This document shows positions 22,461 to 52,989 of a stretch of 57,701 nucleotides of DNA, piece by piece. A program made the position numbers and the translations under genes. The DNA comes from Gracilinanus agilis. Taxonomy: Eukaryota. The stretch spans positions 5,052,134-5,109,834 of the forward strand of contig NC_058130.1 in NCBI RefSeq assembly GCF_016433145.1. The letters run 5' to 3'. The notes below the pieces were generated by a model, which saw only the letters and a list, made by a program, of their open reading frames with translations, did no database searches and was not told the origin of the DNA. Each line of letters begins with the position of its first letter. The stretch's first letter is position 1.

Positions 22461-22466
22461 AATAAA
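22461..22466 (+). terminator. PSMA2: PSMA2 polyadenylation signal AATAAA
   Basis: AATAAA 132 nt after the stop codon, followed by a GT-rich stretch. Confidence 0.75.
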
Positions 22467-25290: not shown

Positions 25291-26556
25291 ATGTCGGTGC
25301 AGTCGATGCTTCGCGAGCGCATCGCGGCGGCCGAGGAGCTGATCGGGCGGGCCGAGGCGCTGTCGGGCTCCCGGAAGGGCGGCGTGGAGGGCGGCGCCAA
25401 GCTGTGCAGCAAGCTCCGGGCCGAGCTCAAGTTCCTGCGCAAGGTGGAGGCTGGCCGCGTGGCCGTGAAGGAGTCGCACCTGCAGAGCACCAACCTGACG
25501 CACCTGCGGGCCGTGGTGGAGGCGGCCGAGAGCCTGGAGGCCGTCGTGGCGGTGCTGCACGTCTTTGGCTACGCGGATGGGGCCGGCGACAAGCAGACGC
25601 TCGTGGTGGACGTGGTGGCCAACGGCGGCCACACGTGGGTCAAGGCCATCGGCCGCAAGGCCGAGGCCCTGCACAACATCTGGCTGGGCCGCGGCCAGTA
25701 CGGCGACCGGAGCGTGGTGGAGCAGGCCGAGGACTTCCTGCGCGCCAGCGCCCAGCAGCCCGTGCAGTACAGCAGCCCCCGCGTCGTCTTCGCCTTCTAC
25801 AACGGCGTGTCCAGCCCCGTGGCCGACGAGCTGAGGGGGATGGGCGTCTCCGTCCGGGGGGACATCGTGGCCGTGAACACCCCCCCGGAGCGACCCGAGC
25901 GGCTCCTGCCCGGCGATGGCGAGTCGGACGAGGAGGCTCCGGGGCTCCCGCCGGTGACCCGCGTGGACAGGGAGAACGTCGTGGCCAGCGTGGCCTTCCC
26001 CACTGAGGTCAAGGTGGACATGTGCGGCCGCGTGAACCTGGACATCACCACCCTCATCACGTACGTGTCGGCGCTGAGCTACGGCGGCTGCCGCTTCGTC
26101 TTCCGCGAGAAGGTGCTGACCGAGCAAGCCGTCCAGGAGCGCCGGGAGCGCGTCCTGCCCCAGCTCGAGGCCTTCATGGCCGGCAAGGAGCTGTTCGCCT
26201 GCGAGTCGGCCGTCAAGGACTTCCAGGCCATTCTGGACACCCTGGGGGGCCCCGGGGAGAGGGAGCGGGCCGCCCGGCTCATCCAGGGGGTCCGCGTGGT
26301 GCCGGACCAGCCCTCCGAGCGGGCCTTGAGACTGGTGGCGAGTTCCAAGATCAACAGCCGCTCGCTCACCATCTTCGGGACGGGAGACACCCTGAGAGCC
26401 GTCACCATGACGGCCAACAGCGGCTTCGTGAGGGCCGCCGCCAACCAGGGCGTGAAGTTCAGCGTCTTCATCCACCAGCCGCGGGCGCTCACTGAGAGCA
26501 AAGAGGCGCTCGCCACCCCCCTACCAAAGAGCTGCCCGGCCGGTGGCGGGCTCTGA
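25291..26556 (+). CDS. C7orf25: UPF0415 protein C7orf25 homolog, single coding exon, 421 aa
   Basis: [18 protein letters not shown]...[16 protein letters not shown]...[18 protein letters not shown]...[11 protein letters not shown] matches my recollection of human C7orf25; acceptor CTCTCTCAG at 25271; same gene order as in human. Confidence 0.95.
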
Positions 26557-32801: not shown

Positions 32802-34727
32802 GATGGTCTGGATTTTTATATTTGACAAAGCCTGCCTGTTCCCTTCTGTTTTCCTCAGGGCTACCCTCAATCCGTGTGTAAATCATTCCCATAGGGAATT
32901 CTGTATCCATTTAGGTCAAGAGATCGGGGTCTTCTCAGTCTCCTTTTGGTGGTAGTAATATCATGTGGGATTACTTATTCAATTATCCCCTCCCTCAAAA
33001 TGTTTTAAAAAGATTAATCCTGCTGAGATGTCTCTATATCAAATCAGGTACTTTTCTGCTCTATCTGCTCTCTTCCAGCTTTGCCCCCATCAAGGTCTGA
33101 GGGGTTAAAAGTCGTGATCCTTGGGTGGTCCTGGAATGGATTATGAAATGGATCGTTAGGAGTGTGCTGGCCAAAGTTCCCCACTTCCTGCTGATGGTCC
33201 ATCTGTGAGTGAATCAGACCTGGGCTGACGTGGCTTAGTAGGTTTCTTGCTAAGTTTTCGGCAGGTTTTCTTTTGCCCCTAATGCTTTCTCCAGCCTTGT
33301 GAGAAGGCATTGCTGTGTTCTGTCATCTTCCTCTGGACTAGTTAATCTTAATTGATATTTCCTCTGGCTGGAATTTGTCCTAGCTGGGCAGGGAGACCAA
33401 GGACTTGCTGTCTAAGGCAGTTTCTCGCCTGTTTTGGCCTTCCCGTTGTGGCCACTGCTTTACATGCTGTTAAGCTTCTTTAGGAAAGTGTGATAAGTTA
33501 CAGGGATGTCTCCTATATTTTTCTCTCCCTCCCTCCCTCCCTCCTTTCCTCCTCTTCTTTCCTTTCTTCCTTTCTCCTTTCTTCTCTCCTCTTCCTCCTT
33601 CTCTCATCAGTTTATCAGACAAGATAAAGTCACATTTGTAATTAGATCAGTCCTTTTGGCTTCTCTTCGCTCCTTCCAGTTTGATGCTGATTTTGCCCTT
33701 ATTAGTCGAGGGTATCCCGTCTCATTTAGAGCAGCTTCTCCGAAGACTCAGCAGCACATAGGAGGCAGGGATTCCTATCTGGAAAGACGGGGTCAAGTTC
33801 TCTGGTCATGTTCTTAAGTCCTTATAGTGGCCTTTCAGTTTCTGAGCCTCATCTTGAAGAAAAATATTCCTGATCTGGAAGAAAGAGGAGTTTTTGCCCC
33901 TCTGATCTCATTTGTTTCTTAATCCTCAACCTTATTTCCAGTGTGATTTTCATTCTCCTCGTCCCAGCAAAGCCCCCCCTTCTGGGTTTTCTCTCCCAAT
34001 GACCACCTGGCACTGGCAAGAGCAACCTCCAGAAGGTGCCCCTCTACTTCTCCTCTTAGGTTCAAACCACCCGGAGAGGCTGGAGATGGTTTTCTGCCAT
34101 GCTCACCCCCAAGCTCCTATCCGGTACGGCCCCTCCCCGAGGATGTAGCCAGAATTCATTCGATTTTAGAAAAGGGCATTGATATGGTAGAGTAAAAGGA
34201 GAAGAGCAGACATCTCCCCCTGCCTCTCCCGGGGGTAAACTCGTCCTCCTGTTTAACACTCTGTGCCCAGGTGGAACAGGCTCCAAGGAGCGCCTGGCAT
34301 AGTACCCGGCACATAGTGGGTGCTTTTACACATCTGTTCCCTTCTCCGGACTCCCCCCTTTCAAACTCTGAGACGTCTCCTTCACCCACAAAGCTCCCCA
34401 TTCCTGCATGTGCTTCTTTTCTGCTTTGGGGGAGCCGAGCCAGGCCTTTCGCAGAGTCCTGAAGCTGCCTGGCCTCAGGGTGTCCGGTCTGTCCTCAGTC
34501 TGCCCCTCTGCCCGCCCCACGCGGTCCTTGGTCACCCAGGAGGCCGTCCTCCGGTCAGTGGATGAGGAGGAAGTCCTCGGGGCCTTTCCAGCCCTGTGAA
34601 ATCTGCCGCCCCAGCCCCTGGGAGCCCAGGCTGGCCTCCTCCATTATGGCGAGGCATCCGAGGTGACTGTGTAGGGGACAGCAAAGGAGCGAAAGCCTTA
34701 TAAGTTAGAACTACACAAGACTTCTGG

Positions 34728-34945
34728 TGGTCGCTGTTCAGTCTTGTCCCACCATGACCCCACAAAGACCCTGGAGTGGTTGGCCAGCTCCTTCTTCAGC
34801 TCCTTTTAGAGATGAGGAAACTGAGGCAAACGGGGAAGTGACGTGGCCAGCGTCACGCAGCTCATAACTGTCTGAAGCTGGACTTTCACTCGGGAAGGGG
34901 AGTCGTCCCGATTCTGAGCCCGGCGCTCCATCCACGGGCCACCGA
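34728..34945 (-). mobile_element. MAR1 SINE (GC-drifted)
   Basis: GGAGTGGTTGGCCAGCTCCTTCTTCAGCTCCTTTTAGAGATGAGGAAACTGAGGCAAAC. Confidence 0.65.
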
Positions 34946-37050
34946 GCTGTTGTTTATTCAGTGAAACCTGCTCTCTCGAAGACTGGCTTTGGGGGGCTCT
35001 GGGGCTGGGCCCCACTGAGTAGCCAGCCCGCTGCAGGGCCTCTGTTTGGTCTCGTCTCACTTCCCTTTTCCCTGCCCTTGCCTTGGATGCTTAGAGCTTA
35101 TCTTCAAATATTGAATTTATTTTTAATGAAAAAAAAAAGTCTATCGTCTCTTTTTCCTCCCTCCTCGCACTGGGGGAGCCAATTCTGCTGAGTCAAAACA
35201 GATTCTCCCACCGGCCTCCTCCCTAAACTAGAGCTCCTACGGCCGGCGCTATCGGGAGGGGAGCAGCGGGCTTCGTCTTCCGCCTGCTGGAGCCACGGTG
35301 AGCTCACTCTCTGCCCGGGCTGCTGCCAGATCTGCACAAAGTGAAGGCTAAGCCCTGGGCTGCCTCATACCCCGGAGGATGCCTCTTTGAGGCCAGGGCA
35401 AGGGCTGCAGGCCTTAGGCAGGCCAGTGAAGCCGGGAGACCCTCGGCCCTTGAGGTCTGGGTCAGTTTGGGCCTGACGTGGAGCCAAATAGGCTCACCTT
35501 GGACTCTGCCTCCTCTGCTCTTGTCCCAGTCTCTAGGGGGCCCCCCTGCCATCCCGCGGGCTGGCCATCAGAGGGCGGATAAGTCCGCCGTCCTGTGCTC
35601 TGTGGAAGTCTCGGGGTCCCTCTCCAGGGAAACGGGAGGAAACCTCCAAAGGGGATGGGTGTGACCCCGCCAGAGCCAGACAGCCTGAACTTGAGCTCTA
35701 GGGAGGATGGGAGGCCGGCTTCAGGGCAGCTCTAACCATTGGAAAGGGGGCCTTTCCCCGCCTCCGTCGGCCTCTTGGGCTCTCAGTTCTTCCTTGGGGC
35801 CTTTCCCCACAAAGAGTGGAGGACAGCTACTGTGGACGCTTCAGTCAATCCACATTTATTTAGCACCAGGCCGTGTGCTAAGCACTAGGCTCTCTCCTGG
35901 CTTCTCTTCTGCAGCTTCAACAGCTGATCCTTAAGGGATCTTGACAGCCTCGGCCTGGGTGCCCAGCGCTTACTTGGCACAGTGCCCGGCACACAGTAGG
36001 CGCTTAATGCCTGCTTGTTAACCTGCCTTGTCTCTTCATTGATTGGTGCCCCCCAGAAGCTGTCAGGCAGGGCAGTGGACAAGGGAATTCCTCTCAGGAG
36101 GGTCGCTGCTTCCCTCCTGGGGATGAAGTTGGCCCGCTTCGGCCAGCAAAGGGGGCTCCTCGCCTGCCACCCGGGGACTCCCCCCCCTTTCCTGCTTGGG
36201 AGCCAACCCAGAGAAGCGGCTCTCGTTCAAGCCTGCCTCCTCCCGGGGCCCCGGAACCTTGGGATGGCGCGTCCCCCCCAGAAACAACTCGCAGCCAAAG
36301 GCTCGGGAGATGTCATCATCCACCGTTTATTGTTTTCAGGCATTTGTGACAAAAGGGGGTCTCTGGCAGCGCCACCAAAGAGAAGGCTGGAGGTCAGAGG
36401 AAATCGGGCCGTCTTCCTCGTCCGGGCTCTCGCCCTGGGCAGCTGGGAAATGGGCTGAATGGCACCGAGCCGAGCCGTCTCTGCTTCCACAGCCCGCTCT
36501 CTGATGCCATCCGTGTCGTTGTCCCCAGCGCCCAGGGAGCTCCCTGGCTGGATGCTGTTATCTGCCGGGAGCCTGGGCTCCGGGGAAGTTTCTCTGGGCT
36601 GGATTCTTAGGCTGGAAGAGGAAGAGAGAGGGAAGAACTCGTTCTAAGTGCAGCCCAGAAAGCAGAAGAGCCTCCGTGTGGGCCGCCTCCTCCTGCCACT
36701 TTCCACCCAGAATACCGCCTTCCTATGGCAGCCCTGAGAAGGAATCATGATCTCTAAATAGGAAAGGCCCTCGTTTCCCATCCAGCCCTGCCTGCCCCAA
36801 GCCAGTCTCCTCTCTCCCCACTCAGCTCCTGCCCAGTGGTCCAGACTCTTCTGGAATCCCCGCAGGGACGGGGCGCTCACTATCTCCCCAGGCAGCCCTT
36901 TCTACTCATTGTGAGGAGATTTGCCCTGACCTCCAGCCCAAGTCTGCCTCTCTGGGACTTCCACTCAAGCCTTTCTTCTTCCTTGTCTCAATCCTCCGGG
37001 GCTGTAAGACAGGCAGGATCGGAATGACTAACCTGGCCAGGCCCGTTTCT

Positions 37051-37056
37051 TTTATT
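37051..37056 (-). terminator. Candidate polyadenylation signal AATAAA of the unnamed secreted-protein gene
   Basis: TTTATT on the plus strand, 70 nt after the predicted TAG at 37127. Confidence 0.45.
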
Positions 37057-37126
37057 GAAAGAAATACAGAGGCAGGCCATGCCCACCTCTCCTACTGGGC
37101 AGACTCCCAGAGCCCGGCGCATCCAG

Positions 37127-37143
37127 CTAGGAAATGAAGATGC
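37127..37143 (-). CDS. Unnamed secreted mucin-like protein, candidate terminal exon 3 (GIFIS*)
   Basis: Acceptor CTACCTCCGCAG, phase 1 compatible with exon 2, early TAG and downstream AATAAA. Alternative terminal exons exist (see findings). Confidence 0.4.
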
Positions 37144-37379
37144 CTGCGGAGGTAGCTCCAAGGCTGGCCCTTTACTTTTCATTAAGCAAATCGAGGAGAC
37201 AAAATCTCCTCTCCCTTCCCCTGCCAGCTGGGATCCTTTCCTCCTTTTTAATGACACTTCCACCACCAGCACAGTCCCTGGCACACGGGGCGTGCCTAGA
37301 CATTTCTTGTGGATTCATGGTAGCCTGAGAGGGATTGAACCGATGGACTAATGGATCCTCACAAGGGTCCCGTGAGCTC

Positions 37380-37910
37380 TCTGTTCTTCTTAGCTTTAGG
37401 CTTTAGAGGTGAAGAAATTCATCCTCACCTGATTAAGTGACTTGTCATTAAATGAAGTGGAATTTGAACTCAGCTCTTCCCCATTCCCTGGCAGCCACAT
37501 CTCTAACCACTGCACCTACCTTCTGAATAGCAATTGCTAAACTATGCCTAACGTCTCAAAGTGTGCAAGGCACTTTTCCTATGTTGTCTCATTGGAATCC
37601 CACGAGAGCACTGTGAGGCAAGTAGAAGAAATGATTATCCCCATTTTACAGACGAGGAAGCTGAACCACTGAAAATTAGGCAATTTCCTCAAGATCCCAC
37701 CCATACACCGAAGAGGACTCCTGACCGAGCCCCCTTTCCCCCTCGCTACTGCTCCTTGTGCTGACCAGACACTTTTTTGCTCATGTTGCTGATTAAACAT
37801 TTGAGACTTGGAGAGTTTCAGCGACTTGCTCAGGGTTTCATAGCTAGAAGGTGGAGGAAACGTGGCTTAAACCAGATTGTCCACTTGCAAACCAACTGAT
37901 AGCATGATGC
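37380..37910 (-). mobile_element. Cluster of MIR fragments
   Basis: ATTATCCCCATTTTACAGACGAGGAAGCTGA; GACTTGCTCAGGGTTTCATAGCTAG; GGAATTTGAACTCAGCTCTTCC. Confidence 0.6.
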
Positions 37911-37924
37911 CTCTCTAAGGTATC

Positions 37925-38055
37925 TCCCCTCCCTCCTTTCTTCCCTTCTTCCTCCCCCTCCTTCTTCTCTACCCTGTCCTTTCTCCCTTCTTCCCCCCTT
38001 CTCTTCCTTCTTCCCTCCTCCATTCCCTCTTTCCCCCTCCTCCCTCCTTCCCCGT
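37925..38055. repeat. CT-rich low-complexity tract
   Basis: About 130 nt of almost pure C/T. Confidence 0.85.
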
Positions 38056-38101
38056 GGCCTGGGACTTGGGAGAGGACCCAGAAGCTATGGCACTCTCTTA
38101 C

Positions 38102-38497
38102 CAGTAGTGGAGCTCTTAGTGGTCTCTGCCGTGGGGGTCTCGTCTGTGACTTCGTAGTTCTCAGTGGTCTCTGCCGTGGGGGTCTCGTAGCTGCCAGTGG
38201 GCTCAGCCGTCGGCATCTTGTCTGTGGCTTCTTCGCTCCCCGTGGGCTGGGCAGTCAGGATCTCGTCGGTGACTGTCAGAAATTCTGAGCTTGGTTCTTG
38301 GCTCGGCTCCGGGCTGGTTTGCAGGAGTGGCTCCTCACTGGAGCTGGGCCCCTCGGTAGGTTCTTCGGAGTCCTTGGCCTCTGTCATACAGCTGGATTCA
38401 TTGCAGAGCTCCTGGGTTGGCTCGGGGCTGGCCTCCACCAGCAGACTGTCTATCGTTGGGCTGGTCGAGTTCTCAGTCACCGAGTTTGCAGATTCTT
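38102..38497 (-). CDS. Unnamed secreted mucin-like protein, exon 2 (132 codons; acidic, Ser/Thr/Glu/Pro-rich)
   Basis: Acceptor CTGCTTTCATTGTCCAG, donor ACTG|GTAAGA, 396 nt, phase 1-1, open frame EESANSVTENSTSPT...ETPTAETTKSSTT. Confidence 0.72.
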
Positions 38498-39122
38498 CTG
38501 GACAATGAAAGCAGAATTAAGGCCTCTTTTCCTTTGTTCTCTTGGCTGAATTCCCTGTCCCCAAACCAGTTCATTAAGCAGGAGAAATGAGAGATGAGAT
38601 TAATTGGCCACCATGGGGAGAGCACCCCACTTGAGCTAGGAATCCAAGCCCTGGCTTCAGATTTCAGCTGGGCTGGTGGACTGACTCCCTGGGTGACTTT
38701 GGATGAGTCCTTGCCCTTCTCGGGACCTCGGGGTCCTCACTCGTCAACCGAGGGGTCAGGGATCTCCCAGGTCCTTTCCAGGTCCCTATCCTCCGGTCCC
38801 TTCTTTCCCAGATCACGCTGGGCCCCATCGGTCCTCCCTTTAGCTACATTTCTCATGGGTTCGGATACAGAGGGAAAAGGGATTGAGGCCCCAAACAGCT
38901 TCAGCCTCCCACCATCAGCCTGGCTTTTCTTTGCTTCCATCTACGTTCTCGAGAAAGTTTCCCCAATGGGAGCTTTTCGATTTCGAGGGATGAAAATACG
39001 GGCAAATGGGGAAGGGAGGGACAGAGACTCACCCCAACACGAAAGCCCGTTCTGATGGCTCATTTTAACTGAGCGACGGCACAGAAATTCAGAGCTCTAC
39101 AAGGGGGCTCCCCTCGACTTAC

Positions 39123-39192
39123 CTTGGCCTTTGGTTGAGTGGACCAGGGCCAGGGTCATGAGGCCACAGAGGACTAGGACTTCCTTCAGCAT
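39123..39192 (-). CDS. Unnamed secreted mucin-like protein, exon 1 (signal peptide MLKEVLVLCGLMTLALVHSTKGQ)
   Basis: ATG with A at -3, basic N-region, hydrophobic core and small residues before the predicted cleavage site; consensus donor CAAG|GTAAGT; phase 1 matches exon 2. Confidence 0.72.
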
Positions 39193-39271
39193 CTTGATGG
39201 CTTCTCTTGGTGGCGAGGGCTAGCGGGGAGCCAGGCTGAGCAGCGTCTGGCAGGGAGAGAAACTGCGGTCC

Positions 39272-39319
39272 TATTTAAGGGAGCGCTCGCCCTTCTGGGT
39301 CAGCTCGTGCCTCCGCCCC
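39272..39319 (-). promoter_or_regulatory. Core promoter of the unnamed secreted-protein gene (TATA-like TTAAATA 39272-39278; GC box near 39310-39319)
   Basis: CCTTAAATAG about 80 nt upstream of the ATG; GGGGCGGAGG further upstream. Confidence 0.55.
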
Positions 39320-40149
39320 CTCAGGAGGGAACCTTTCTGGAAACATCAAGTGAGGCAAGGGGGGGGGGGCAACAACTCATTTAGCCTCCAGGTTAATGGC
39401 AGGAAAACCTGGAGGGCTCTGAAGGGCCTCAGCCTCCTCCCTTGCCTTGCAATTCAGGTCAGGTGGGAAGCCAAATTATAGGTAGGAGAGATGGAATGAG
39501 ATGATAGGAGCTCTGCAGAGGTCACGAAAGAGAGACAGCAAGGCTGAGCTGGGTGCTCAAGGGTTCTTGGAGGGTCTTGGGGCACCTATGATTCATCGAG
39601 GCAAGTGCTGACCCTGGCCTGGGGTGGGAGAGGGAACTGAAGAGCCAGATGTGATCCACAAGTGATCCCCAATCCTTGCTCCAGGGCGATGGGGAGAAAG
39701 CTTGGTGCAGCCAGGAGAAGGATGGATGCCAAGCCCAGAGACCTCAGGTCAAACCAGGGCTCAGAAGCTTAGTGGCTCTGGGATCAGGAGCATCATTCGA
39801 TCTTTATGAGCCTCAGTTTCCTCACCTGGCTAAGGAGGGTGTTAATAATAATAATGCAGGATCAGATTAGCATCACAAAATCTTAGGGCTGCCCCAAGGA
39901 CCCTCAGGAACCATGTGACTTGAACAGAACTGAACAGAACCCCTGGGACTTGAACAGAATGTCCTTCACATTACAACCTACGTGGCATCCAACTTTTTCT
40001 TGAAGACCTCCAGGTGAGGAGAGCTCACTACCTCTAGGGTAGCCCATTTTGTATTACTCAGAAGGTTCTCCTGGCATCAAAGCTAAAGTCTCCTTTTCAC
40101 CTTTGATCTTTTGTTCCAGTTCTGCATTATGAGATCAAGAATAACCAGT

Positions 40150-40800
40150 CTAATTCTTCCTCTGCGTGATAGCTTTTAATTTTTAAAACAATATTCTATT
40201 CCCCCCCATTACATGGGAAAACAATTATTTAATATGTTTTTTTAAAGTTTGAATTCCAAATTCTTTCTCTTCTTCTGACTTCCCCTCCCCTCCCCTTTCT
40301 TCCCCCCTCCCTGAGATGGTAAGTAATTTGACATAGATTTTACATGTGTAATCATGTAAACCATGAAAATGAAGAAAGAAGTGAAATATAGAATGTTTCA
40401 GTGTGCATTCAGTCTCCATCAATTCTTTCTCTGGAGGCAGATGGCATTTTCCATCATGAGTCTCTGGGACTGTCTTAGATCCTTGTATTGCTGAGAATAA
40501 CTAGGTCATTCACATTGGTTCATCAAGAATTAGTGCTGTAACTGTGTGCAATGCTCTTCTGGTCCTGCTCACTTCACTTTGCATCACTTTGTTCATATAA
40601 TTCTTTTCAGATTTTTCTGAAATCATCCTGCTTGTCATTTCTTATAGCATAAAACTTGTTCAAATACCACTCGGCTGATGTTGTGGCCCCTCGTTTTCCA
40701 GTTCTTTGCTACCCCAAAAATAGCTGCAATAAATATGTTTTATACAAGTAGGTCCTTTTCCCCTTTAAAAAATATCTTTGGGATACAGACCCAGTAATAG
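40150..40800 (-). mobile_element. L1 3' fragment
   Basis: TGAGATGGTAAGTAATTTGACATAG...TTGGGATACAGACCCAGTA, typical of antisense marsupial L1. Confidence 0.75.
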
Positions 40801-40804
40801 ACTT

Positions 40805-41150
40805 GGCTACTAAAATAGCTGGGCATCAATCGAGGACAATTCTGAGAGACTTGTGAGGAAGACTGCTATCCACAGCTCGAGAAAGGACTGTTGGAGTAGA
40901 AATGCAGAAGAAAACACATGACTTATCCCTTGTTTACATGGGTATAAGATTTGGGGTTTTGGTCTTAAAAGATTGCTCTCTTATCAAAATGAACAATATG
41001 GAAATAGATATTGAGTGATAATCCATGTACAACCCAGAGGAATTGCTTTTCAACTCTAGGATGGAGGAAGAGAAGAAGGGAGGGAGACAACACGAATCAT
41101 GGAAACATGGAAACAATTTTAAAAATTTGAAATAAGATGAAAAATAAAAT
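40805..41150 (+). mobile_element. L1 3' UTR fragment
   Basis: GACAATTCTGAGAGACTTG...AAATGAACAATATGGAAATAG, with an A-rich end. Confidence 0.7.
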
Positions 41151-41424
41151 GAGTTGCCTAGAACTGGATGCAAAGCCCCAGTCCTTGTGGTGTGACCAGA
41201 GCAGAGGGAGGTGAGACTCTCCCCTTAAGACGCAGACTCTGGCCAATGACCGTTAGCTGTCAGATCACACAACTCCCATTGAACTCTCAGTCCATTCCAG
41301 CCCCCAAATATTCCCTCATTGGAAATGGCAATGAAAACTAGAGAGGATGCACCACCCTTTGCTTTGCCATTGGGCCCTGAGGACCACGAAGCCTTTCCAT
41401 TTATAAGCGGCTGAAATGTCTTTA

Positions 41425-41570
41425 TGTGTTAGCTCCCCCTAAGAGAATGTGAGCTCTTTGAGAAGAGGTCCTGTTGGGCTTCTTCAAAATTTGTAACCTC
41501 AAAGCTAGACATTTAGTCAGGACTTAATAAATACTTTCTCATTCATTCATTCATTCATTCATTCATTCAA
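41425..41570 (+). mobile_element. L2 3' end with (ATTC)n tail
   Basis: AGAATGTGAGCTCTTTG...CTTAATAAATAC followed by (ATTC)n at about 41540-41568. Confidence 0.7.
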
Positions 41571-44500
41571 GCCCAGGCAAGACTAATAATAGCTACTAAT
41601 TGCTCTTCCTTAGTGTTTTAAGTCTTGCCAAGTACTTTAAGTACATTTTCTTATTTGCTCATCCTAACAACCCTGGGAAATATAACTGTTTCCTTTTATA
41701 GATTTGGCAGCTGAGACTGAGAGAAAGTAAATGACTCACTTAATAGCAAATGATTTGGTAAGAGTCAGAAGGCAGATTTGAACTCAGGTCCTCTGTAATG
41801 GGAGATGATCTTGACTTTGAGGAAGAGAGGGAAGGTCAAGTGGCTAAATGAGGGACTAATTCTCTGGGTAGGTTGCTGAGGTCCCTTCCTCCACCCACCT
41901 CTCTTCCTCTGTCCTGTCCTTCCTTCTTCCTTCGTTTTCTCTTGATTTCTTCCTCTTCCTCTCCTTTCCAAATGTCTTCCTTGTTGTTTGGATTATTTGC
42001 TTGGCCCCTGACACATGCTTGGTTCCTGTGGGTAAGATTTCTTTTTTCTTTGCATATGACCATGCATAAAGCTAGATAGAATGTGAAGAACCCATGAACT
42101 CTTAGTCAAGAGATGGAGAGGGAAGATACCAACAAGGATGTGGCTGCAAGAAAAACCAACGGGTCTTCTCCTAGTGGCTTCCTTGAAAAAACCTCAGACA
42201 AAATAACTTCTTTTTCTTAAACAAAGTTTAAAAGACTTGAGAGAAAATGCTCCCACACTCTCTGCTATACATATCAAAGAAATCACAGTAAGTGCCTGTT
42301 GTGAAATCGAGGTCTAGGTGGTAACTGAGAGTCCACTTCGAAGAAGGCACCAGGCACATGGGGGGCTTTTCTCTAAAGGCCCCATGGAAGGGTTTGGGCA
42401 GGCGTTGCATGGGATGGACTGGCATGGAAGGATCTACAGCACTGGAAAGAGGAAGGACCCACATTGTGGGGCTCTGGTTAGAGTATGTTTGTTGAGAAAG
42501 GGGATCCCTCTCCCCCGGGAGGGAGACTTCAAATGACTTTTTTGTTTCCTTGTATGAAGTCTGGGCACATCCCTTCTAAATCCTTCCTGTTTATGTCCAA
42601 ACTCCCCATTGTTTTTGTCTGAACAAACTTCTCCAAAGACCCAAGAGCTGGTTCTGGAAGGAAAATCTCTTCTTAAGATAGCTTTAACATGAACAGAAGA
42701 GGACAAAGATAGAGGCATTGGAAATTGTTGAGAGATTTCTGCCAGTCTTTAGCCATTTGGGCAAGACACTCGGGATGTTGTGAGCATGGGTTTAAGGGCA
42801 AAGGGACAAGAATCTTCCATTCTTTGAGAGCTAGATGGGTGTCATTATTCTGGCCAGTGACCTCTCCCAGCCTTGGATGATGCAATTTTCTAAGTATTTC
42901 CTAATACATAATCTTATTCCATCTGAGAACAGGTCAGGAATCAAGATGATTGCTTGTTGGTCAATTGCTGACAATCTCACGGAGAGGAAGTGGCAAAGCT
43001 GGGGGCCAGGAAACAGGTCTCCAAGATGCTTTCCATGCCTTTTTCATGCCTTTCCTGCTCCAGGCTGCCTATATCAAGTTAGCCAAGATGCTGGCTCATG
43101 GGAATGTTGATGGTGCAACATGAACTTGAATGAGATGCAGATGCTAGCAGGAACAGTAGAACAGCCACTGGGTCTGGAGTCAGAGAGCCTGGGTTCATAT
43201 CCTGGCCCTGCCACTTGCAGTCCTCGAGTAGTTCCTTTTCCTTCTGCCTCAGTCTCCTCCTATGTCAAATGGAGGAGCTGGGCCAGGTAGCCCTTGAAGT
43301 TTTTTCCAACTGTATGGCTATGATAATCAAGTCTCTGTGACAATACGATAAGCAAGGAAATAGCAATTTAGTTTTCGAACAAGAAGAACAATCGTACGCT
43401 CCATCTGATTACACAGCTTTACCCCTGGTTTCATTTATTCCTGAGATAGAACTCAGGACAAGAGTTCATTTCCCCCTTGGAAGCCTTAACCAGGATTGCA
43501 TCTATGGAAAACAGGGTCACACTACTAAAACCAGGCTGAGATAAGGGAAGCCTTTGTCTCTCAATTATAGGCTCCTGTGGGCCTGCCAGAACCCCCAGAT
43601 TCAAGCTGTAACTCCTTGTCTTGTCACAGGATGGCCACTTTTGCCAGGCCCGAAGGTGAGGCAATGCTATGTGATTCATTCAGTTAGCTTCCTGATGGCT
43701 CCTTCCTGAGTCCAGCCAGGGCACAGGAGAGATCTCAAAGGGCTGGAGCTGGTGGGACAGGTACCATGCTGGAGTAAGACTGAGGGGAAGAAAAGTCTGC
43801 CAACCAAATCATCTGGACAAGCATCCAATGAGGACCTTCTGGGCAAAAAAACCAGGCCAGACAACAGGACTATGGGAGCTAAGATCAATGTAGTATTTAT
43901 AAATGTTAAGCAGGCCATCACCACATTTGGACCAGCATTCAGGGCCCGCGATGACAACATGGTGTCAAGCTCCTTCTCCAAGATTCTTTCCCAAGACTGC
44001 CTTCTGTCCACTCCGTGCTGCAGCCACACTGGTCTTTTGTCCACCTCCCCTCACTCTTATTCCCCTCCATCTAAACCCATCCCTTCTATTTTCCCACCTT
44101 CTTCTTCTCAATACCTGAAGTGCTACTTAGCCTTTGAAAGAAGGCCACTCTCTCTAGGAAGTCTTCCATGATCCTCCCTCCATCCACCCCTTTTCCCACT
44201 TAGCAACCACATTTTTCAACCTGAACCCAGATGGGGGTGGGGGTGGGGGGGAGAGACAGAGAGAGACAGAGACAGAGAAGGAAGGAGGGAGGTCAGGAAG
44301 CCGACACCAAGATGACTTCAGGCCTAGGTAACTGCTAGAGAAGATGTTTCGATAATTGAGTCCCTTATCACTACTATATCAAACCTCTGCCAGACCATGA
44401 TCTCTTCTCCAAATTCCTCATGCATTAGTCTTTCTTTCCAGATCATCCGTAGTATACTCTGGTAACAAAATTGTTACTATTTCTCCCTCCTTTGATCTCT

Positions 44501-45869
44501 AGATCTTCATCATGCTTTGCCTATCTGATTTCTAGACCTCACACAAGTCTATTTTTTTGTATTTAGAATAGTACCCTACTCCCTCCCTGTCCCCAATTCT
44601 AATTCTTTTGAATAAGCTAAATGTATTTGGAGACACATACCAGCCATGGTTTTCATCCCACACAGTCACAGGAATACCCTTGGGGTCAAATTTCTCTGTG
44701 GGTAACAGAATTCCTAGCTCGTTTTGCTAATTGCCTGAATTTTGGGCACACCTCTCTCGGCATTCGAGGTCCTTCCTTGTTGGATACCATCTCCTTCAAA
44801 CTTTGGAGTATCTCAGCTCCTCTTCCTCATGATCACTGACTTCTAGGGTGTCTCACTTAGTAGCTAGACAAAGAGGGTTTGCTCTCTTCCTCATCCTTTA
44901 TATATATTTTTTAATTTTAAACATTTATTAATATTCATTTTTAACATGGTTACATGATTCATGCTCCTACTTTCCCCTTCACCCCCCCTCCCCATTCCCC
45001 CCACCCATCTCATCCTTTATATTTTAAAGCTTTTTTGATTAATTCTACAAGGCTCCAGGCAAATGCCTTCTTATCAGGCTTTGTAGAGTTTAGCTCATTC
45101 CTGGCCAGGAACCCGTCATTCCTGTATTCTTAGTTGTAGTCCAGAAATCCAAACCCCATCATCAGACCTCATTGTTTTAGTGAACTGTTCACTTTCTAAA
45201 TCAATTTTTTTTCTTTTGTGTCTCCTGTTTTCTATGTGAGGCAGGGAGGAAAAGACACCCAGTGCCCCTCTGGTCTGGCGTCACCTTCTGGGTTCCTGCT
45301 GGCAGAACTGTGTGGGTCCCCCAGACTCACCACAAATAGGAGGCAGCTCCTTGTTTGGACAAATCTAGGGAGGCTCTTTGCTAGAAGTCATGAGAAGATG
45401 GTTGACCTCGATACTCTTATCAGATTGATCAGCAACTGTCTTCCTTCTCTGAGCATGGAATCGACAGCCTTCACTAGCCTCTCTCTTCCCTGGGCCTTTA
45501 CCCGATTGTTTCTTATTTCATGGTTTCCATGGATTACTTTTGCTTTTTAAATCCATCTTTGGAAGATAAGTAAACTTGTCCTTCTCCAGCCTGCCAGCTT
45601 CTTCCTTTTTAGGAGTAGCCGCTAATGTTTGTTATTTTTTGCTTTGTTTTAGTTCTATGTCAACAATTGTCCTTTCTCTCCCATTCTCCCACTCTTTGAA
45701 CTCATTCCAAAAGTCATGTTTCTGCTTGGCCAGATCTGATCCCCCCAATTCTCCTTCCCAAATTCAACCTCTGACTTTCTTCATGAGTCCAAATCTCTTC
45801 CAGAAGATCCTGATGGTGTCTCTCTCTTTTTTCAGCTTGTCTTTTTTCTATTATATTTGTTTCTTTTCA

Positions 45870-46520
45870 TGTTTCTCAAATATTTTAAATTTTCAATTAC
45901 ATACAAAATTTTTTTAACATTTCAAAAGAATCTGAGTTCCAAATTCTCTCTCTCCGCATCCCTCACCTCTCCACTCATTGACAAGGCAAACAATTTGATA
46001 TGGGTTATAGATGTGCAGTTGTGAAATACATATTTCTGTTTTAGTCATGTTGTAAAAGAAAACACAGACCAAAAAGAAGAAAGAAAGTAAAAAGAACTCC
46101 ATCAGTTCTTTCTTTCAGTGCAGATAGCATTTTTCATCAGTCCTTTGACATTGTCTCAGATCATTGTGTTGCTGAGAATAAATCGTTCATAGTAGATCAT
46201 CATAAAATATTGATATTGTTCTGATACAATATTCTCCTGGTTCTACTCATTTCTCTTTGCATCAGTTCATGTAAGCCTTTCCAGATTCTTCTTTCAGCCT
46301 CCTGCTCATCATTTTTTAGAGCATAAAAGTATTCCAAAAGAATTGCTATAAACTTTTTTATACAAATAGGCCCTTTTCCTTTTTCTTTGATCTTGTTGGG
46401 ACACATACTAGTAGTGGTATTGCTGAGTCAGAGAGCACGAATAGTTTTATAGCCTTTTGGTCATAATTCCAAACTGTTCTCCAGAATGGTCCAATCGATT
46501 CACAACTTCACCAAAAAGTT
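45870..46520 (-). mobile_element. L1 3' fragment
   Basis: GACAAGGCAAACAATTTGATATGGG...CTCCAGAATGGTCCAATCGATTCACAAC. Confidence 0.75.
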
Positions 46521-46589
46521 CAGCTCAAGTCTTTCTATCTTCTCCTGCCACCTTCCCTTCAGTCATCACTAGTGAGAAGGAGAGGACAT

Positions 46590-46970
46590 TTCCAAGAATG
46601 AATGACAAGGAGGAGAGATGACTCAGGAGAGATGGGATCATTACCTTCCAGTTTCTGAATAGCTGTCACATGGAAGAAGGACGTCATTGTTCTACCAGAC
46701 CCTGGAAGACAGTACTAAGAACAATAGGTGGAAGCTGCAAGTTGACAAATTTGAACTGGATAAAAGCAAAACTTTCCTAACTATTGGAACTACCTCAAAG
46801 TAGGATGGGCTGCTTCAGCAGACAATGGACTCCCTCTTAATGGAAGCAATGACTAGATAATGAATGTCCTTGTTATTCAGTGGTAGAAAGGAATCTTGTT
46901 TAAGCACAGGTTGGTCTAAAAGGCCTTGGGAGTCCCTTCTAACTCTGCAATATTTTGATTCTAAAATCCC
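46590..46970 (+). mobile_element. L3/CR1 3' fragment
   Basis: CTGTCACATGGAAGAAGG...GGTGGAAGCTGC...AAAACTTTCCTAACTATTGG. Confidence 0.6.
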
Positions 46971-46999
46971 CAGAGAAGCACAAACATAGAGAAGTGGAC

Positions 47000-49215
47000 C
47001 TTCTCTTTGCCAACACCAATATTTCTATGTGACTCTTGATCCAATCCATTTCCATATTCTCCAGTAGATTGTCTCCATTATCCTCCCAGTATCTCACTAA
47101 TCTTTAATCGCTCTACCTTCTGGATTCTTCCCTTCTTCCCCACTGCTTAAAAATTCATCCATGTCTTCACCTTCCTAAAAAAGAATTCTTACTTGATTTT
47201 ATCATCTCTGAAAACTATTATCCCATATTTCTTCTCCCCTTCTTCTCCCCTTCTTCTCCCCGTCCCTTTGAGAAAATCAACTACATTAGTGGCTGTCTTT
47301 TTCCTCACTCTTTTCTTTTTTCTTTAAAATTTTTTTAAAATTTAGAATATTTTTCCATGCTTGCATGATTCATGATCCCCACATCCCGCTCTTTCCTCCC
47401 CCTTCCCAAAGCTGCCAAGCAATTCCACTGGGTTATCCATGTATTATTGTTCAAAATCTATTTCCATGTCATTCATATTTGCAGTAGAGCAATCTTTTAA
47501 CATCAAAACCCTAATCATATCCCTATCGAACTAAGTGATCGATCATGTGTTTTTCTTCTGTGTTTCTGCTCCCACAGTTTTTTTCTCTGGATGTGGATAG
47601 CTTCTTCTTATAAGTTCCCCTGGATTGTCCTGGGTCATTGTGTTGCTGCTAGTAGAGAAGTCAGTTACATTAAATCGTGCTACAATGTATCAGTCTCTGT
47701 GTACAATATTCTCCTGGTTCTGCTCCTTTCACTCTGCATCAATTCCTGGAGGTCTTTCCAGTTCACATGGAATCCCTCCAGTTCATCATTCCTTTAAGTA
47801 CAATAATATCTTTACTCTTTTCTAAATTCTCTGCCATAAGGTTTTTTACTTCATCATTCAACTAGATCTGCTCTTTCCAAAGTTACCAATGTTTTCTCAG
47901 TTGTCAAATGTGATAGCCTTTTCTTAATCTTTTTCCTTTGACCTCTCTGCAAATTTTGACATTATCAATACTGCTCATCTTCTGTATACTCCCTTGTTTT
48001 TCATGATATGACCCTCTCTTCCTATCTATATCTCCAATCACTCCTCAATCTCCTTTGCTGATACTTTCATCCATGTCATGCTTTCTAACTAGGAATATTC
48101 CCCAAGGCTCTGTCCTGGCCTTACTTTTCTTATCCTCAGTATTATTTTATGTAGTGATTGCATCAACTTCCATGGGTTCAAAGATCACCTCTAATGTAGA
48201 TGATTCACATATCTAGTTATCCAGTTCCAACATCTTTCTTGAATTCTAGTTATGTATCATCTGTTGCCTTATGAAAACCTTAAACTGGGTTTCCTATTCT
48301 CTCAAATACAAAATGTTCAAAACAGAATTCACTTTCTTTCTCCCAAGCCCTTCCATTTCCAGAAATCACTGATTACTGTTGAGGGCACCACCATCTTCCT
48401 AGGCACCCAGACTGGCAGATTCTATTATTCTGAACTCATCACTCTTACTTTCACCACATGTTCAATCTATTGCCAACTCTTGTAATTCTGTCTTCAAAGT
48501 ATCTATAACATCTGTCCCTTTCTCACTAATTATACCTCTTCTCTGCAGAAATACCTTATTATCATCCTGGCCTTCTAAACTATTTCCCTGGCCTTCAGGT
48601 TATTCTCCCTACTATAATTTCTTCTCATTCTGGTCTATTTCCCATTCTTCTGCTATCATTTTCTTAATGCACAATCTAATCATAACACCTCTCTCCTGCT
48701 ACCCTTCTTAGCAAACTTTCTATTACCTTCCAGGTATAACATGAAATCCTCTGGTATTAAATGCCCTCCATGACCTGCTCTCTTCTTACCATTCCAGGCT
48801 TCCTATTCCATTTCCTTCCACATACTCCATGATCCAATGATATTGGCCTTCTTGGGTGCCTCACACATGATACTCCCTTTCCCTGTTCTATGTTTTCCCT
48901 CTGATTGTCCATTCCCCCTTGTCTGGAATGCTCTGCCTTCTTGGCTCTGCCTCCTGTCTTCTCTGGTTTCCTCAAGCTCATCTCCAATCTCTGACTTTGT
49001 GGAAAGCCTTTCTTAGCCTCCACCATGGCTAATGCCTTTCCTCTGAGATGATCTTCCATTTGCACTGTCTAGCTTTTTATGTTCTGAGTTATTTACTTGC
49101 TCTCTCCTCCTTTGAACTGTGGAGACAACACGTGTTCTTAGCATCCTGCCTGACACCTAGTAAGCACTTAGTAAGTGCATTTTCGCTCACTAATTCAGTT
49201 GTTTATTCATTCATG
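47000..49215 (+). mobile_element. Long L2 LINE remnant, interrupted by L1 at about 47315-47813
   Basis: CT-rich L2 RT-like sequence (CTGCTCTTTCCAAAGTTACCAATG; CCCCAAGGCTCTGTCCTGG) ending in an L2 3' terminus with ATTC tail near 49200. Confidence 0.7.
47315..47813 (-). mobile_element. L1 3' end inserted into L2
   Basis: Poly-T start and L1 3' UTR; flanked by ACTCTTTT at 47307-47314 and 47814-47821. Confidence 0.75.
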
Positions 49216-50329
49216 TCCCATAAGATCCCTCCAGTAACTCTGTGCTGGAGGCACTGCGGATCTTAAAGTCTCCATCTTATAGGTGCCAAGACCGAGCGAG
49301 GTCTAGGTATGGGAGAGCTTCTTTTCCCTGATCAGATACAGGATTAGAACATGAATCTGAAAACATGCCGATTCAGATGGTCTTTTTTCCGGGCTAGATG
49401 TGAGTTGGAGGTTGTATTCAACTCTCTTTGTTTGTCAGGTACAGGTGGAAGTTTGTTTCCCACAAACAAATCTAGACTCTCACTGCAAAATTCCAGAGGA
49501 AAGGCTGCTTGTGGATCAGAGGAGACAGGAGAAACACCCAACTTGTATCTCAATTGGCAAAAGCCCATCTGCCTGAACATGTTTTCCCATTCGTGTTTAA
49601 TCCTGTCCCTGATGGGCAGCAGGTGGCTTCTGCTCACCTAGACTTCAGGTTGGCCCTCTGTATGATACAGTCCAGAGCCCTGCAGGGAGCAGGTCCGGAC
49701 TCAGTATTCATTGAAGGAAGGAATAAATGTACGTGTCTATCTGCAGAGATTAAGAACACAAAGTCCCTGTTTCTACGGGGCTAAATTTATGGTTTACAGA
49801 GTGATTTCCTCAGAACATCTCGATGGGGTAGACCAAGCAAGGAAATTTTTTCCCACTTTATAGAGAAGGAAACTGAGGTTCAGAGGGGTCACCTGCCCTG
49901 CGCAGGGTCACCTAGCCAGTAGGTGGGATTTCAATCCAGTTTTCCAGATTCTTGGTTGATTATCTGGTACTATTCTTGCTGCTAACACTTTCTCAGACTC
50001 CCAATGGCAGAGAAGCATCCTAGTGGGTGTATTCCAATGGATATCTCCTATTATGCTGGTGAAAATTAGCATCTTTGATGAAAGTCTTGTCTGCTGTAGG
50101 CTCCGGTTTCCTTCGTGAGGTCACCTGCAGACCCTGACCTCAGGTCCTGGGCTCATGAGTGTGGAAATTAAAGAACCCCAAGAGCACAGGCCTGGAGCCA
50201 GGAGGACTCCATAAAACGAGCATTTATGCAGGAGGATACTGAGTCCTTGAGAGACTGAAGGCTACACATCAGGTCCATAGCATCATGAAGATTAGAACTC
50301 AGGCCCTGGGCTTCCAAGGCTGGGGTTCT

Positions 50330-50580
50330 TTCCCACGTGGATCATGGCTAACTTTCTTGCTGAGGTTGTTGTGGAGTTGTCTCTGTGACCCCACTGGGGG
50401 TTTTCTTGGCAAAAGTACTGCACTGGTTTGCCATTTCCTTCAGAAGCCCATTTGACAGAAACTGGGGCAAAGAGTGACTTATCCAGGTTGACCTAGCTAG
50501 TGTCTGAGGCTGGATCTGAACTCAGGAAGAAGAGTCTTACTGCCTCTGGGTCTAGCTCTTTATCCACAATACCACCTAGC
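50330..50580 (-). mobile_element. MAR1 SINE
   Basis: TTTTCTTGGCAAAAGTACTGCACTGGTTTGCCATTTCCTTC. Confidence 0.7.
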
Positions 50581-50964
50581 TAATGAGATTTTCATAAAGT
50601 GCTTAACAGTGCCTGGCACATAGAAGGTGCTAAATATGTAAATGCTAATTATTAATATTAAATTGCCTTTAGGGCACTGTCTCATAAAAGGGCTACTTCT
50701 AACTGATGCCTCCTCCTTTCTGCCCACAAGACCTCCCAGCTTACTGGAATCAGGAAGACGTGAGTTCCAATCCTGTCTTAGGCAGGTCACTTACTTCATT
50801 TGCGGTGTCCACTTATCTTCTCTGTGTCTTGATTTACTCATCTCTAAAAACTGGGATAATAATAGCATCTACCTAATGATAGCTAACACTTATATAGCAT
50901 CTAATATGTGCTAGGAACCAGGCTAAGGATGTTACAGTTGTCTCTTTCCCTAATCCTGTCAGTT

Positions 50965-52680
50965 AGCCAATCAATGAACAATTATGAAGTGCCTACTATG
51001 TGCCAAGCACAGGTGCTAAGCACTGGGGATAAAAAAGGAGGCTGAAGACAGTCCCTGCCCTCAAGGAGCTCCCAGTCTAATGGGGGAGACAACACGCAAA
51101 GAACACAAAGAAAGCTTTCAGGATAGGATAAATAGACAACAATTAAATGGAGGGAACTGGTCAGCAGTAAAGGGGGGAAAGGTTCCCTGCAACAAGGCAG
51201 GATTTTACCTGGTACAGACTTGCCCATTTCTCAGATTGGTAACTATGGATGGTTGGCTCTGTCTGTCCTGTTTAATGCTGCATGAAGCTTTTTTGCTAGC
51301 AGCTCCTTTCTTTAAGGATCCAGGCAAGTCCTCTGTCTGGTCCCTGAACGCCTTTGAACCTCGCTGATCCTGAGCTCCTGGTCCAGGATCCGGGGCATCG
51401 TGTCCCAGGCGAGCTCGGTCAGTGCATGGAGGGCTCATCGCATACTCATACCCTGGCCAGGCCAGTTGACAACCGAGGAAGCTGTCCCGCTTCCTAGAAG
51501 GATAATGACAACAGCCATAATAGTGATAGTTGGCACTTACATAGTGTTTCAAGATTTATAAAGCGCTTTATAAATATTAACTCGTTTGATCCTCACCACA
51601 CCCCTGGGAGGTCAGTGCTACTATTCCCCCCATTTTGCAAGGGGGAAATGGAGGCAGACAGGATAAATGAGTTGCCCAAGATCATACAGCTAGTCTGTAT
51701 CGAGGCAATATTTGAATTTGGGTTTTCCCGTGTCTATACTGAGGATTCTTCCCATCACATCATCCAGCTGTCGATCAGAAAGAAAAGAGGAGGATTAGGG
51801 TTGGGGTGGAGAGGAAGGCACTTAGGAAATAATATCACCCCAGAAGAAATGCTGAAATGGAGAGTTTCAGCTGAAGCCAAGAAGGCTCCATGGAGAAGTA
51901 GGAGAACCATTTATAGGATGGCGACAGCAACAATATAAAGAAAGACAATAACGAAAGGCTTTAGAACTCTGGTCCAAGCAATGATCAACCCTGATGCCAG
52001 AGGAGTGAAGACTGAGACCCATAGTCTGGACAGGGCCAATATGGGAATTTGTTTGGAAAGACTATGCCTATTTATAAGGAGGATTTTTATTCTTATTGGT
52101 CTCTAGAGGGGGAAGATAGTAAGAGATGCACGCAAATAAATACAGCGAAAAAGGAGAAAAGGTCACTACACTGAGTGATCTCTCTGGAGAAAGAAGGTAG
52201 GGAAACATTGAGTAATGAAGTTGAGAGTGAGACAAAAGATTGCTGAAGAATGACTGAGAGAACGAGAAGTGTAAGCACCAATAACTTTATCAAAGAATTT
52301 AGCAGAGTGAAGGAGGAAAGATAGAAGATAATAGCCAGGGGTGTGGTTGGATGAAGTGGAGGGTTTTTTAAAGAATGGAGTGACTCAGGCCAGTTTGTAT
52401 CAGGAAAGAACTAGCCCACAGGGAAGGAGAGATGGAAGTTAAATGATAGGGTAGGGATGATAAAGGAGGCAAAAGTCTTAGAGAAAGTGGAATGGGATGG
52501 AATCACTTGTGCATGTGAGACAGTAGTGTAGAGGGGGATAGTGGTAGAGGGCATCTGAGAGATGCGAGATGAAGAGGAGGGCAGAATTTAGCAGCTAATT
52601 GCAGTTTTTTCAGTGATGTCCTCAGGGCAGTGAGTGGAATGGTGTGTACAGCTTGAGGAGAGATGAGAAGGTTTGGAAAA
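50965..52680 (-). mobile_element. L2 remnant (antisense) with a MIR inserted at about 51520-51750
   Basis: CAGTCCCTGCCCTCAAGGAGCTCCCAGTCTAATGGGGGAGAC and purine-rich L2 body. Confidence 0.6.
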
Positions 52681-52704
52681 GCCAAAGAAGAGAGTGGGAA
52701 AGGG

Positions 52705-52960: not shown

Positions 52961-52989
52961 TCCAATGAATCAATTAGGGAGCCATAGAA

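What the first reader, a model, noticed from the sequence alone, without database searches (positions are those of the whole stretch)
37051..39319. Unrecognised three-exon gene for a secreted, acidic mucin-like glycoprotein
Seen: GC box, TATA-like TTAAATA, ATG, a 23-aa signal-peptide exon with perfect donor, a 396-nt phase 1-1 exon rich in E/S/T/P with two N-glycosylation sequons (NST, NES) and a CNESSC pair, then a stop and AATAAA (about 160 aa). This many consistent signals is unlikely by chance, and the ORF track misses it because it is spliced. I do not recall a comparable gene next to C7orf25 in human. Established: signal exon, phase-1 intron and mucin exon is the layout of small glandular secretory proteins such as the GLYCAM1/LACRT/MUCL1 group; homology is not demonstrated here. 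Inference: a candidate marsupial-specific secretory protein (milk, pouch/skin, reproductive tract or saliva).
Basis: partly seen in the sequence, partly recalled or inferred. Interest (0 to 1): 0.8.

Follow-up and report, generated by a model that had tools for sequence, protein, structure and literature searches.

The report
Unannotated secreted mucin-like gene candidate
About 11 kb downstream of C7orf25 in the agile gracile opossum lies a well-formed but unannotated small gene model for a secreted, very acidic, sugar-coated (mucin-like) protein with no relative in any database; whether it is expressed or conserved could not be tested.

Summary
The core model (signal-peptide exon, donor, acceptor, phase-matched open exon of at least 120 codons) occurs once in the real window and 0.01 times per shuffled window. 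The promoter, second donor and poly(A) signal lower the chance estimate further.

The window is Gracilinanus agilis. Exon 2 matches nothing: not the marsupial proteomes held in the 5.8-billion-cluster collection, not 1.84 billion HMMER representatives, not Pfam, not PDB. So the gene is unrecognised, and it is not a detectable member of the GLYCAM1/LACRT/MUCL1 group, which sits at another locus.

My best reading (about 0.55) is a real lineage-restricted orphan gene for a small, secreted, disordered, O-glycosylated acidic protein. Splicing, expression, the third exon and conservation remain untested. The single read-laying run was lost to a filter, and DNA of other marsupials could not be fetched. 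Three-base periodicity is only moderate and comes mostly from a short internal repeat. Interest is moderate.

The parts
39312..39320 (-). GC box (GGGGCGGAG), about -65/-72 from the putative start site
   Evidence: Read directly. The combination of a GC box with a TATA-like motif upstream of an ATG is found once among 1527 ATGs of the window.
39272..39278 (-). TATA-like TTAAATA, 30 nt upstream of the Inr-like CCAGACG (A at 39248)
   Evidence: Read directly. There is no CpG island here (CpG o/e 0.32), which fits a TATA-type tissue-restricted promoter. This is an inference.
39193..39248 (-). Putative 56-nt 5' UTR without an upstream ATG; A at -3 of the start codon
   Evidence: Read directly. The start site is inferred, not observed.
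39123..39192 (-). Exon 1 coding part: MLKEVLVLCGLMTLALVHSTKGQ plus the first base of the next codon (phase 1); donor CAAG|GTAAGT
   Evidence: Translation. It has a charged n-region (K3, E4), a 13-residue hydrophobic core and small residues at -3/-1 (VHS or TKG). It ends in the only perfect 9/9 consensus donor in the window.
38498..39122 (-). Intron 1 (625 nt), GT...AG, with the pyrimidine-rich acceptor ttctgctttcattgtccag
   Evidence: Splicing was not observed.
38102..38497 (-). Exon 2, 396 nt, phase 1-1: 132 residues, acidic S/T/P/E-rich, NST and NES sequons, CNESSC, nine S-x-E motifs, two Tyr in acidic context, three degenerate PTAE(P/T)T units; donor CTG|GTAAGA
   Evidence: The frame is open only in this one of the three sense frames. 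P(open in that frame | composition) is 0.007. GC3 is 0.70 against GC1/GC2 of 0.53/0.55. The AF2 model is disordered.
37830..37843 (-). Candidate exon 3, option a: acceptor tttcctccaccttctag|CT, coding ..A-M-K-P-stop (TGA 37832-37830); the 3' UTR would run to about 37030
   Evidence: 17/20 pyrimidines. Not verified by RNA.
37092..37126 (-). Candidate exon 3, option b: acceptor catcttcatttcctag|CT, coding ..AGCAGLWESAQ-stop (TAG 37094-37092)
   Evidence: 14/20 pyrimidines. Not verified by RNA.
37051..37056 (-). AATAAA polyadenylation signal
   Evidence: AATAAA within 1.1 kb is expected at 34% of positions, so this is weak on its own.

Best explanation
This is a real, intact, so far unannotated protein-coding gene on the minus strand of the Gracilinanus agilis genome, about 10.5-12.7 kb downstream of C7orf25 and convergent with it.

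A TATA-type, non-CpG-island promoter would drive a short transcript. Exon 1 supplies a cleavable signal peptide. Exon 2 supplies about 132 residues of intrinsically disordered, highly acidic, Ser/Thr/Pro-rich polypeptide. A short last exon supplies 4-11 residues and the 3' UTR.

The product (about 135-145 residues after signal cleavage) would enter the secretory pathway. There it would be densely O-glycosylated and N-glycosylated at up to two sites. It may also be phosphorylated on its nine S-x-E motifs and sulfated on two acidic-context tyrosines. It would be released as a soluble, polyanionic mucin-like glycoprotein of a body fluid or gland secretion, since it has no membrane anchor.

Shown: the sequence features, the statistics and the lack of homologues. 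Inferred: transcription, splicing, secretion, modification and tissue.
For: - All signals are present and phase-consistent.
- The core model occurs once in the window against 0.01 per shuffled window.
- The signal-exon donor is the only perfect donor in 57.7 kb.
- TATA at -30 of an Inr-like site plus a GC box is seen at 1 of 1527 ATGs.
- A second in-phase donor of at least 7/9 lies 5 codons before the end of the open frame, against 2.2% expected.
- Exon 2 is open in only one sense frame (P 0.007).
- GC3 exceeds GC1/GC2, position 1 is 71% purine, and three-base periodicity gives chi2 34. That is the highest of all open frames of at least 110 codons outside C7orf25.
- Codon choice is typical of mammalian genes: CTG 5/7, AGC 10/20, GAC 5/5, AAG 3/3.
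- No transmembrane segment lies in the 11.5 kb downstream.
- The exons are unique in the window and not repeat-derived.
- The AF2 model is disordered, as for mucin domains.
Against: - There is no RNA evidence. The one read-laying run failed on a filter. The only run that holds the locus (X1, type not recorded) also holds the introns and 150 nt upstream of the putative start site, as a DNA library would.
- No RNA run was reported to hold exon 2. Kidney, liver and muscle RNA-seq exist for this species (PMC8390783), but it is not known whether those runs are in the index.
- No annotated or assembled protein resembles exon 2, not even from this genome or from Monodelphis, whose C7orf25 is 98% identical.
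- The periodicity comes mostly from the last 123 nt, which hold a 45-nt-spaced internal repeat. The first 270 nt give only p = 0.03.
- The sense strand is T-poor beyond the exon as well, so an open frame is easier to obtain there.
- All criteria were chosen post hoc.
Confidence: 0.55

Rival explanations
1. Chance constellation. A T-poor, GC-rich stretch of intergenic DNA happens to be open in one frame, and nearby consensus-like motifs (ATG plus a hydrophobic run, GT donor, AG acceptor, TTAAATA, AATAAA) mimic a gene. Nothing is made from it.
For: - At 0.01 core models per 57.7-kb window, a 3.4-3.7 Gb genome would hold several hundred such core models by chance.
- Given its composition, exon 2 is open in some one of six frames in 12% of shuffles.
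- Two antisense frames are also nearly open.
- Periodicity in the non-repeated 270 nt is weak.
- There is no homologue, annotation or RNA support.
Against: The added features multiply the chance rate down. These are TATA with no upstream ATG (2.2%), a GC box (1/1527 jointly), purine at -3 (54%), an in-phase second donor (2.2%) and AATAAA (34%). The product is of the order of 1e-5 to 1e-8 per window, far fewer than one in the 624 windows read. The donor is the only perfect one in the window, and codon choice is gene-like.
Confidence: 0.2
2. A real transcription unit whose open frame is not a protein under selection. It would be a young de novo or non-coding transcript (lncRNA) with a TATA promoter and splice sites, in which the ORF is incidental or only recently born.
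For: - There is no homologue anywhere.
- Low-complexity, disordered sequence is typical of de novo ORFs.
- Comparison of the internal repeat units shows no excess of synonymous change: 2 synonymous against 5-6 non-synonymous codon differences.
- Annotation pipelines did not call a protein here.
Against: A canonical signal peptide placed exactly in its own phase-1 exon, followed by a phase 1-1 exon, is the classic layout of secreted-protein genes and is not expected of an incidental ORF. GC3 and codon choice are gene-like.
Confidence: 0.17
3. The first two exons of a larger membrane-anchored sialomucin (CD164, endomucin or podoplanin type) whose stalk, transmembrane and cytoplasmic exons were missed.
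For: A signal exon followed by a phase-1 mucin exon is also how membrane sialomucin genes begin (established knowledge). The third exon is unresolved.
Against: Between exon 2 and C7orf25 (38101-26600, minus strand) there is no credible hydrophobic 19-mer. The single hit at mean hydropathy 1.62 is a T-run artefact. C7orf25 on the other strand closes the space. There is no Pfam match to any sialomucin family.
Confidence: 0.05

Closest known systems
GLYCAM1 / PP3 (marsupial VELP) and the neighbouring LACRT, DCD, MUCL1 and marsupial MM1 genes
   Same: Small glandular secreted proteins. The signal peptide is in its own exon, followed by an acidic, O-glycosylated, S/T-rich body. They evolve fast and are hard to recognise by sequence (PMC5054531).
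   Different: There is no sequence or profile similarity. That cluster lies beside TESPA1 (PMC5054531), while this gene lies beside C7orf25/PSMA2. There is no C-terminal amphipathic helix of the GLYCAM1 type, only one 7-residue helix in the AF2 model.
Lineage-specific 'orphan' mucins (MUC7, mouse Muc10 and others; Pajic et al. 2022, PMC9417175)
   Same: Secreted proteins defined by function rather than descent. They have a P/T/S-rich exon with in-frame repeats, arise in single lineages, and have no orthologues elsewhere.
   Different: Those described lie in the SCPP locus and carry many tandem repeats. Here the locus is different, the introns are phase 1, there are only three degenerate 11-15-residue units, and the protein is unusually acidic (net -27).
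Semenogelin/SVS-type (REST) three-exon secretory genes
   Same: The layout is the same: exon 1 is the 5' UTR plus signal peptide, exon 2 is almost the whole secreted protein, and exon 3 is a few codons or only the 3' UTR (established knowledge).
   Different: They lie at a different locus (WFDC region). REST proteins are basic and rich in Gln/Lys as transglutaminase substrates, whereas this one has 3 Lys and 4 Gln in exon 2. No similarity was found.

Membership tests
GLYCAM1/PP3/VELP family | Sequence or profile similarity to the family | tested here: not met
   Pfam-A scan at E up to 10 gave 0 families. phmmer against 1.84 billion representatives gave 0 hits. The word-indexed search gave 0 hits.
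GLYCAM1/LACRT/DCD/MUCL1/MM1 cluster | Position in the cluster next to TESPA1 (human 12q13 orthologue) | tested here: not met
   The window carries MRPL32, PSMA2 and C7orf25, the human 7p14 orthologue. The cluster's position is taken from PMC5054531.
SCPP genes (caseins, MUC7, statherin and others) | All-phase-0 introns; the signal peptide plus two mature residues end the signal exon; SCPP locus | tested here: not met
   Both introns are phase 1 and the locus is different. S-x-E motifs are present (9), but they do not define the family.
Mucin-like (PTS) secreted proteins, a functional class | Signal peptide plus a domain rich in Ser/Thr/Pro | tested here: met
   S+T is 34% and P is 11% over 131 residues, preceded by a signal peptide.
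Mucin-like (PTS) secreted proteins, a functional class | Tandem exonic repeats | tested here: inconclusive
   There are only three degenerate PTAE(P/T)T units, with one 27-nt exact copy at 45-nt spacing. TRF reports nothing in the exon.
Mucin-like (PTS) secreted proteins, a functional class | Dense O-glycosylation of the protein | not testable with these tools
   This needs the protein. No O-glycosylation predictor or proteomic data were available.
Membrane sialomucins (CD164, EMCN, PDPN, CD34 type) | A transmembrane helix and cytoplasmic tail | tested here: not met
   There is no credible hydrophobic segment on the minus strand between 38101 and 26600, and no Pfam match.
Expressed, spliced gene (any) | Reads across junctions 39123>38497 and 38102>exon 3 | not tested

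The most novel reading that the evidence does not exclude
This is a didelphid- or marsupial-restricted orphan gene that arose de novo, or diverged beyond recognition, in the gene-poor stretch between C7orf25 and GLI3. It would encode a new polyanionic, O-glycosylated, possibly phosphorylated and tyrosine-sulfated secretory protein of a gland or fluid not yet sampled, such as scent gland, male accessory gland, oviduct, milk or saliva. It belongs to no described protein family.
Probability: 0.4. Interest if true: 0.55.

Novelty: new member of a known kind. Interest (0 to 1): 0.4.

Why it matters
If real, this gene adds an unannotated, lineage-restricted secreted glycoprotein to the marsupial gene set. 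It would be missed by homology-based and by kidney/liver/muscle RNA-guided annotation. Small fast-evolving secretory proteins such as VELP/GLYCAM1 and MM1 have turned out to be major milk or gland components in marsupials. Orphan mucins are a model for how new gene functions arise. A clean case outside the SCPP and LACRT clusters would be a useful example, though not a conceptual surprise.

Tried and rejected
Both sequencing-run runs returned only run X1. Its type is not recorded, and it also holds the introns and the upstream flank.

2. Homology. Exon 2 was searched against the 5.8-billion-cluster collection, 1.84 billion representatives, Pfam, PDB sequences and the ESM Atlas. The Atlas gave only compositional look-alikes such as the pneumovirus G mucin domain, at scores of 0.84 or below.

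3. Cross-species synteny. C7orf25 orthologues of Monodelphis, Antechinus, Petaurus and Notamacropus were found. However, the look-up of encoding contigs returns no DNA for such large assemblies, and the Monodelphis isoform is not on record. The 10-kb flank would in any case have ended about 0.5 kb short of the gene.

4. A paralogue or second mucin exon at 35061-34804 (tblastn E 0.002) was rejected. That stretch is SINE-like sequence with no open frame of the right kind.

5. A viral or transposon origin was rejected. The exons are unique in the window, the flanking ORFs have no Pfam match, and there are no Rfam or tRNA hits.

6. The claim that the exon is sharply bounded by composition was dropped. 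T-poverty continues into the purine-rich tract after exon 2.

7. The bacterial promoter/terminator scan is irrelevant here.

Full report
**What is there.** The gene model lies on the minus strand and was read directly.
- A GC box (GGGGCGGAG) lies at 39320-39312.
- TTAAATA lies at 39278-39272, exactly 30 nt upstream of an initiator-like CCAGACG (A at 39248).
- The 56-nt leader has no upstream ATG.
- The ATG at 39192 has A at -3.
- The first coding exon (39192-39123) reads MLKEVLVLCGLMTLALVHSTKGQ plus one base. It has a charged n-region, a 13-residue hydrophobic core and small residues at -3/-1, so it is a textbook signal peptide.
- It ends in CAAG|GTAAGT, the only 9/9 match to MAG|GTRAGT on either strand of the whole 57.7-kb window.
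- After a 625-nt intron, the pyrimidine-rich acceptor ttctgctttcattgtccag opens a 396-nt exon (38497-38102), phase 1 at both ends. This exon closes with CTG|GTAAGA.
- AATAAA is at 37056-37051.

**The third exon is not fixed by the sequence.** Three endings are possible, giving 159, 166 or 160 residues.
- The strong acceptor at 37843 gives ...AMKP-stop.
- The acceptor at 37126 gives ...AGCAGLWESAQ-stop.
- An unspliced transcript would end ...GKRVP-stop.

**The encoded protein.** Exon 2 is E 19%, T 19%, S 15%, P 11%, with net charge -27. Its features are as follows.
- Two N-glycosylation sequons, NST and NES.
- One Cys pair, CNESSC.
- Nine S-x-E motifs.
- Two tyrosines in acidic surroundings (GSYETP, ENYEVTD).
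- Three degenerate PTAE(P/T)T units near its end.

A single-sequence AlphaFold model is disordered, with pTM 0.11 and one 7-residue helix. No transmembrane-like segment exists on this strand between exon 2 and C7orf25. The predicted product is therefore soluble, not membrane-anchored.

**Is it more than chance?**
- I scanned for a signal-like first exon, a donor of at least 8/9, an acceptor with a pyrimidine tract, and a phase-matched open exon of at least 120 codons. The scan finds exactly this model in the real window and 0.01 per locally shuffled window (2 of 200). Alone, that would still allow hundreds of chance models per genome.
- The side features are rare in this same window. A TATA-like motif 40-130 nt upstream of an ATG with no upstream ATG occurs at 2.2% of 1527 ATGs. 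With a GC box it occurs at 1 of 1527, the candidate itself. An in-phase donor of at least 7/9 within 12 codons occurs at 2.2%. AATAAA within 1.1 kb occurs at 34%.
- Multiplied, chance expectation falls well below one per genome for the full set, and to a few per genome for a conservative subset. These criteria were defined after seeing the model, so the numbers are indicative only.

**Intrinsic coding signs are moderate.**
- Exon 2 is open in only one of the three sense frames. The probability of that, given its composition, is 0.007, and 0.12 for any of six frames.
- GC3 is 0.70 against 0.53 and 0.55 for GC1 and GC2, and position 1 is 71% purine.
- Codon choice is typical of mammalian genes: CTG 5/7, AGC 10/20, GAC 5/5, AAG 3/3.
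- Three-base periodicity (chi2 34, p 6e-6) is the strongest of all open frames of at least 110 codons outside C7orf25.
- Most of that periodicity comes from the last 123 nt, where the short repeat sits. The first 270 nt give only p = 0.03.
- The strand is T-poor beyond the exon as well.
- Comparison of the repeat units shows no excess of synonymous change.

**Context.**
- The exact C7orf25 protein of the window (25291-26556, +) is on a record of assembly GCA_016433145.1 that is 801,374,265 nt long. This is the length of the longest scaffold of the Gracilinanus agilis assembly (801.37 Mb; PMC8390783).
- The called genes on the upstream side of C7orf25 are PSMA2 and MRPL32. No gene is called in the 10 kb after C7orf25, and that flank ends 0.5 kb short of the candidate.
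- The candidate is convergent with C7orf25.
- Its promoter has no CpG island.
- It sits at the far edge of the GC-rich block that spans 6-40 kb of the window.
- Neighbouring long ORFs have no Pfam match.
- There are no Rfam or tRNA hits.

**Homology.**
- Exon 2 finds nothing in the 5.8-billion-cluster protein collection.
- It finds nothing among 1.84 billion HMMER representatives, not even itself.
- It finds nothing in Pfam or PDB sequences.
- The ESM Atlas returns only compositional look-alikes.
- The same collection does hold annotated proteins of Monodelphis (C7orf25 98% identical), Antechinus, Petaurus and Notamacropus.

The gene is therefore unannotated in all of them, or absent from them. 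It is not a detectable member of GLYCAM1/PP3/VELP, LACRT, MUCL1 or MM1. Those genes lie beside TESPA1 at another locus (PMC5054531). It is not an SCPP gene either, because both introns are phase 1.

**What could not be done.**
- The only run that holds the locus (X1) has no recorded type. It holds the introns and the 150 nt upstream of the putative start site as well. That is what a DNA library of the same animal would give, so it is no evidence of expression.
- Published RNA-seq for this species covers only kidney, muscle and liver.
- DNA of other marsupials could not be fetched.
- Splicing, expression, tissue and conservation are therefore all untested.

**Verdict.**
- The most likely reading (about 0.55) is a real, lineage-restricted orphan gene for a small, secreted, polyanionic, O-glycosylated mucin-like protein. 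It would be made in a tissue that annotation data have not sampled.
- The rivals are a chance constellation (0.2), a real transcript whose ORF is not a selected protein (about 0.17), and the start of a larger membrane mucin (0.05).
It works like them but is not a member of any of their families.

Noticed in passing
window 11760-26556: The conserved MRPL32 (minus) / PSMA2 (plus) / C7orf25 (plus) arrangement is present. C7orf25 is a single 421-codon exon with extreme GC3 (0.95).
   Followed up: partly
window 37923-38052 and 33535-33604: A purine-rich GGA/GGGA low-complexity tract starts about 50 nt after the exon-2 donor. A 76%-similar tract lies at 33.5 kb. It keeps several frames open (a 59-aa Gly/Glu/Lys/Arg ORF) but has no coding signs.
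   Followed up: partly
window 37640-37700, 34800-34830, 39760-39870: MIR-like SINE cores (ttcctcgtctgtaaaatgg..., gaggaaactgaggctca...) lie in intron 2 or the candidate 3' UTR, downstream of the gene, and about 500-650 nt upstream of the promoter. I recognised them by eye; no repeat library was available.
   Followed up: no
window 6001-40000 versus 40001-57701: A GC-rich block (0.50-0.67) covers the three known genes and continues 13 kb past C7orf25. It ends just beyond the candidate's promoter, after which GC falls to 0.38-0.46. The 27-37 kb part has no recognisable gene.
   Followed up: partly
window 18243-18382: There is a 140-base run of N inside PSMA2.
   Followed up: no
window 35971-36006: read laying refuses this stretch because of a filter. 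Any later read-laying on this locus should start at about 36010.
   Followed up: no
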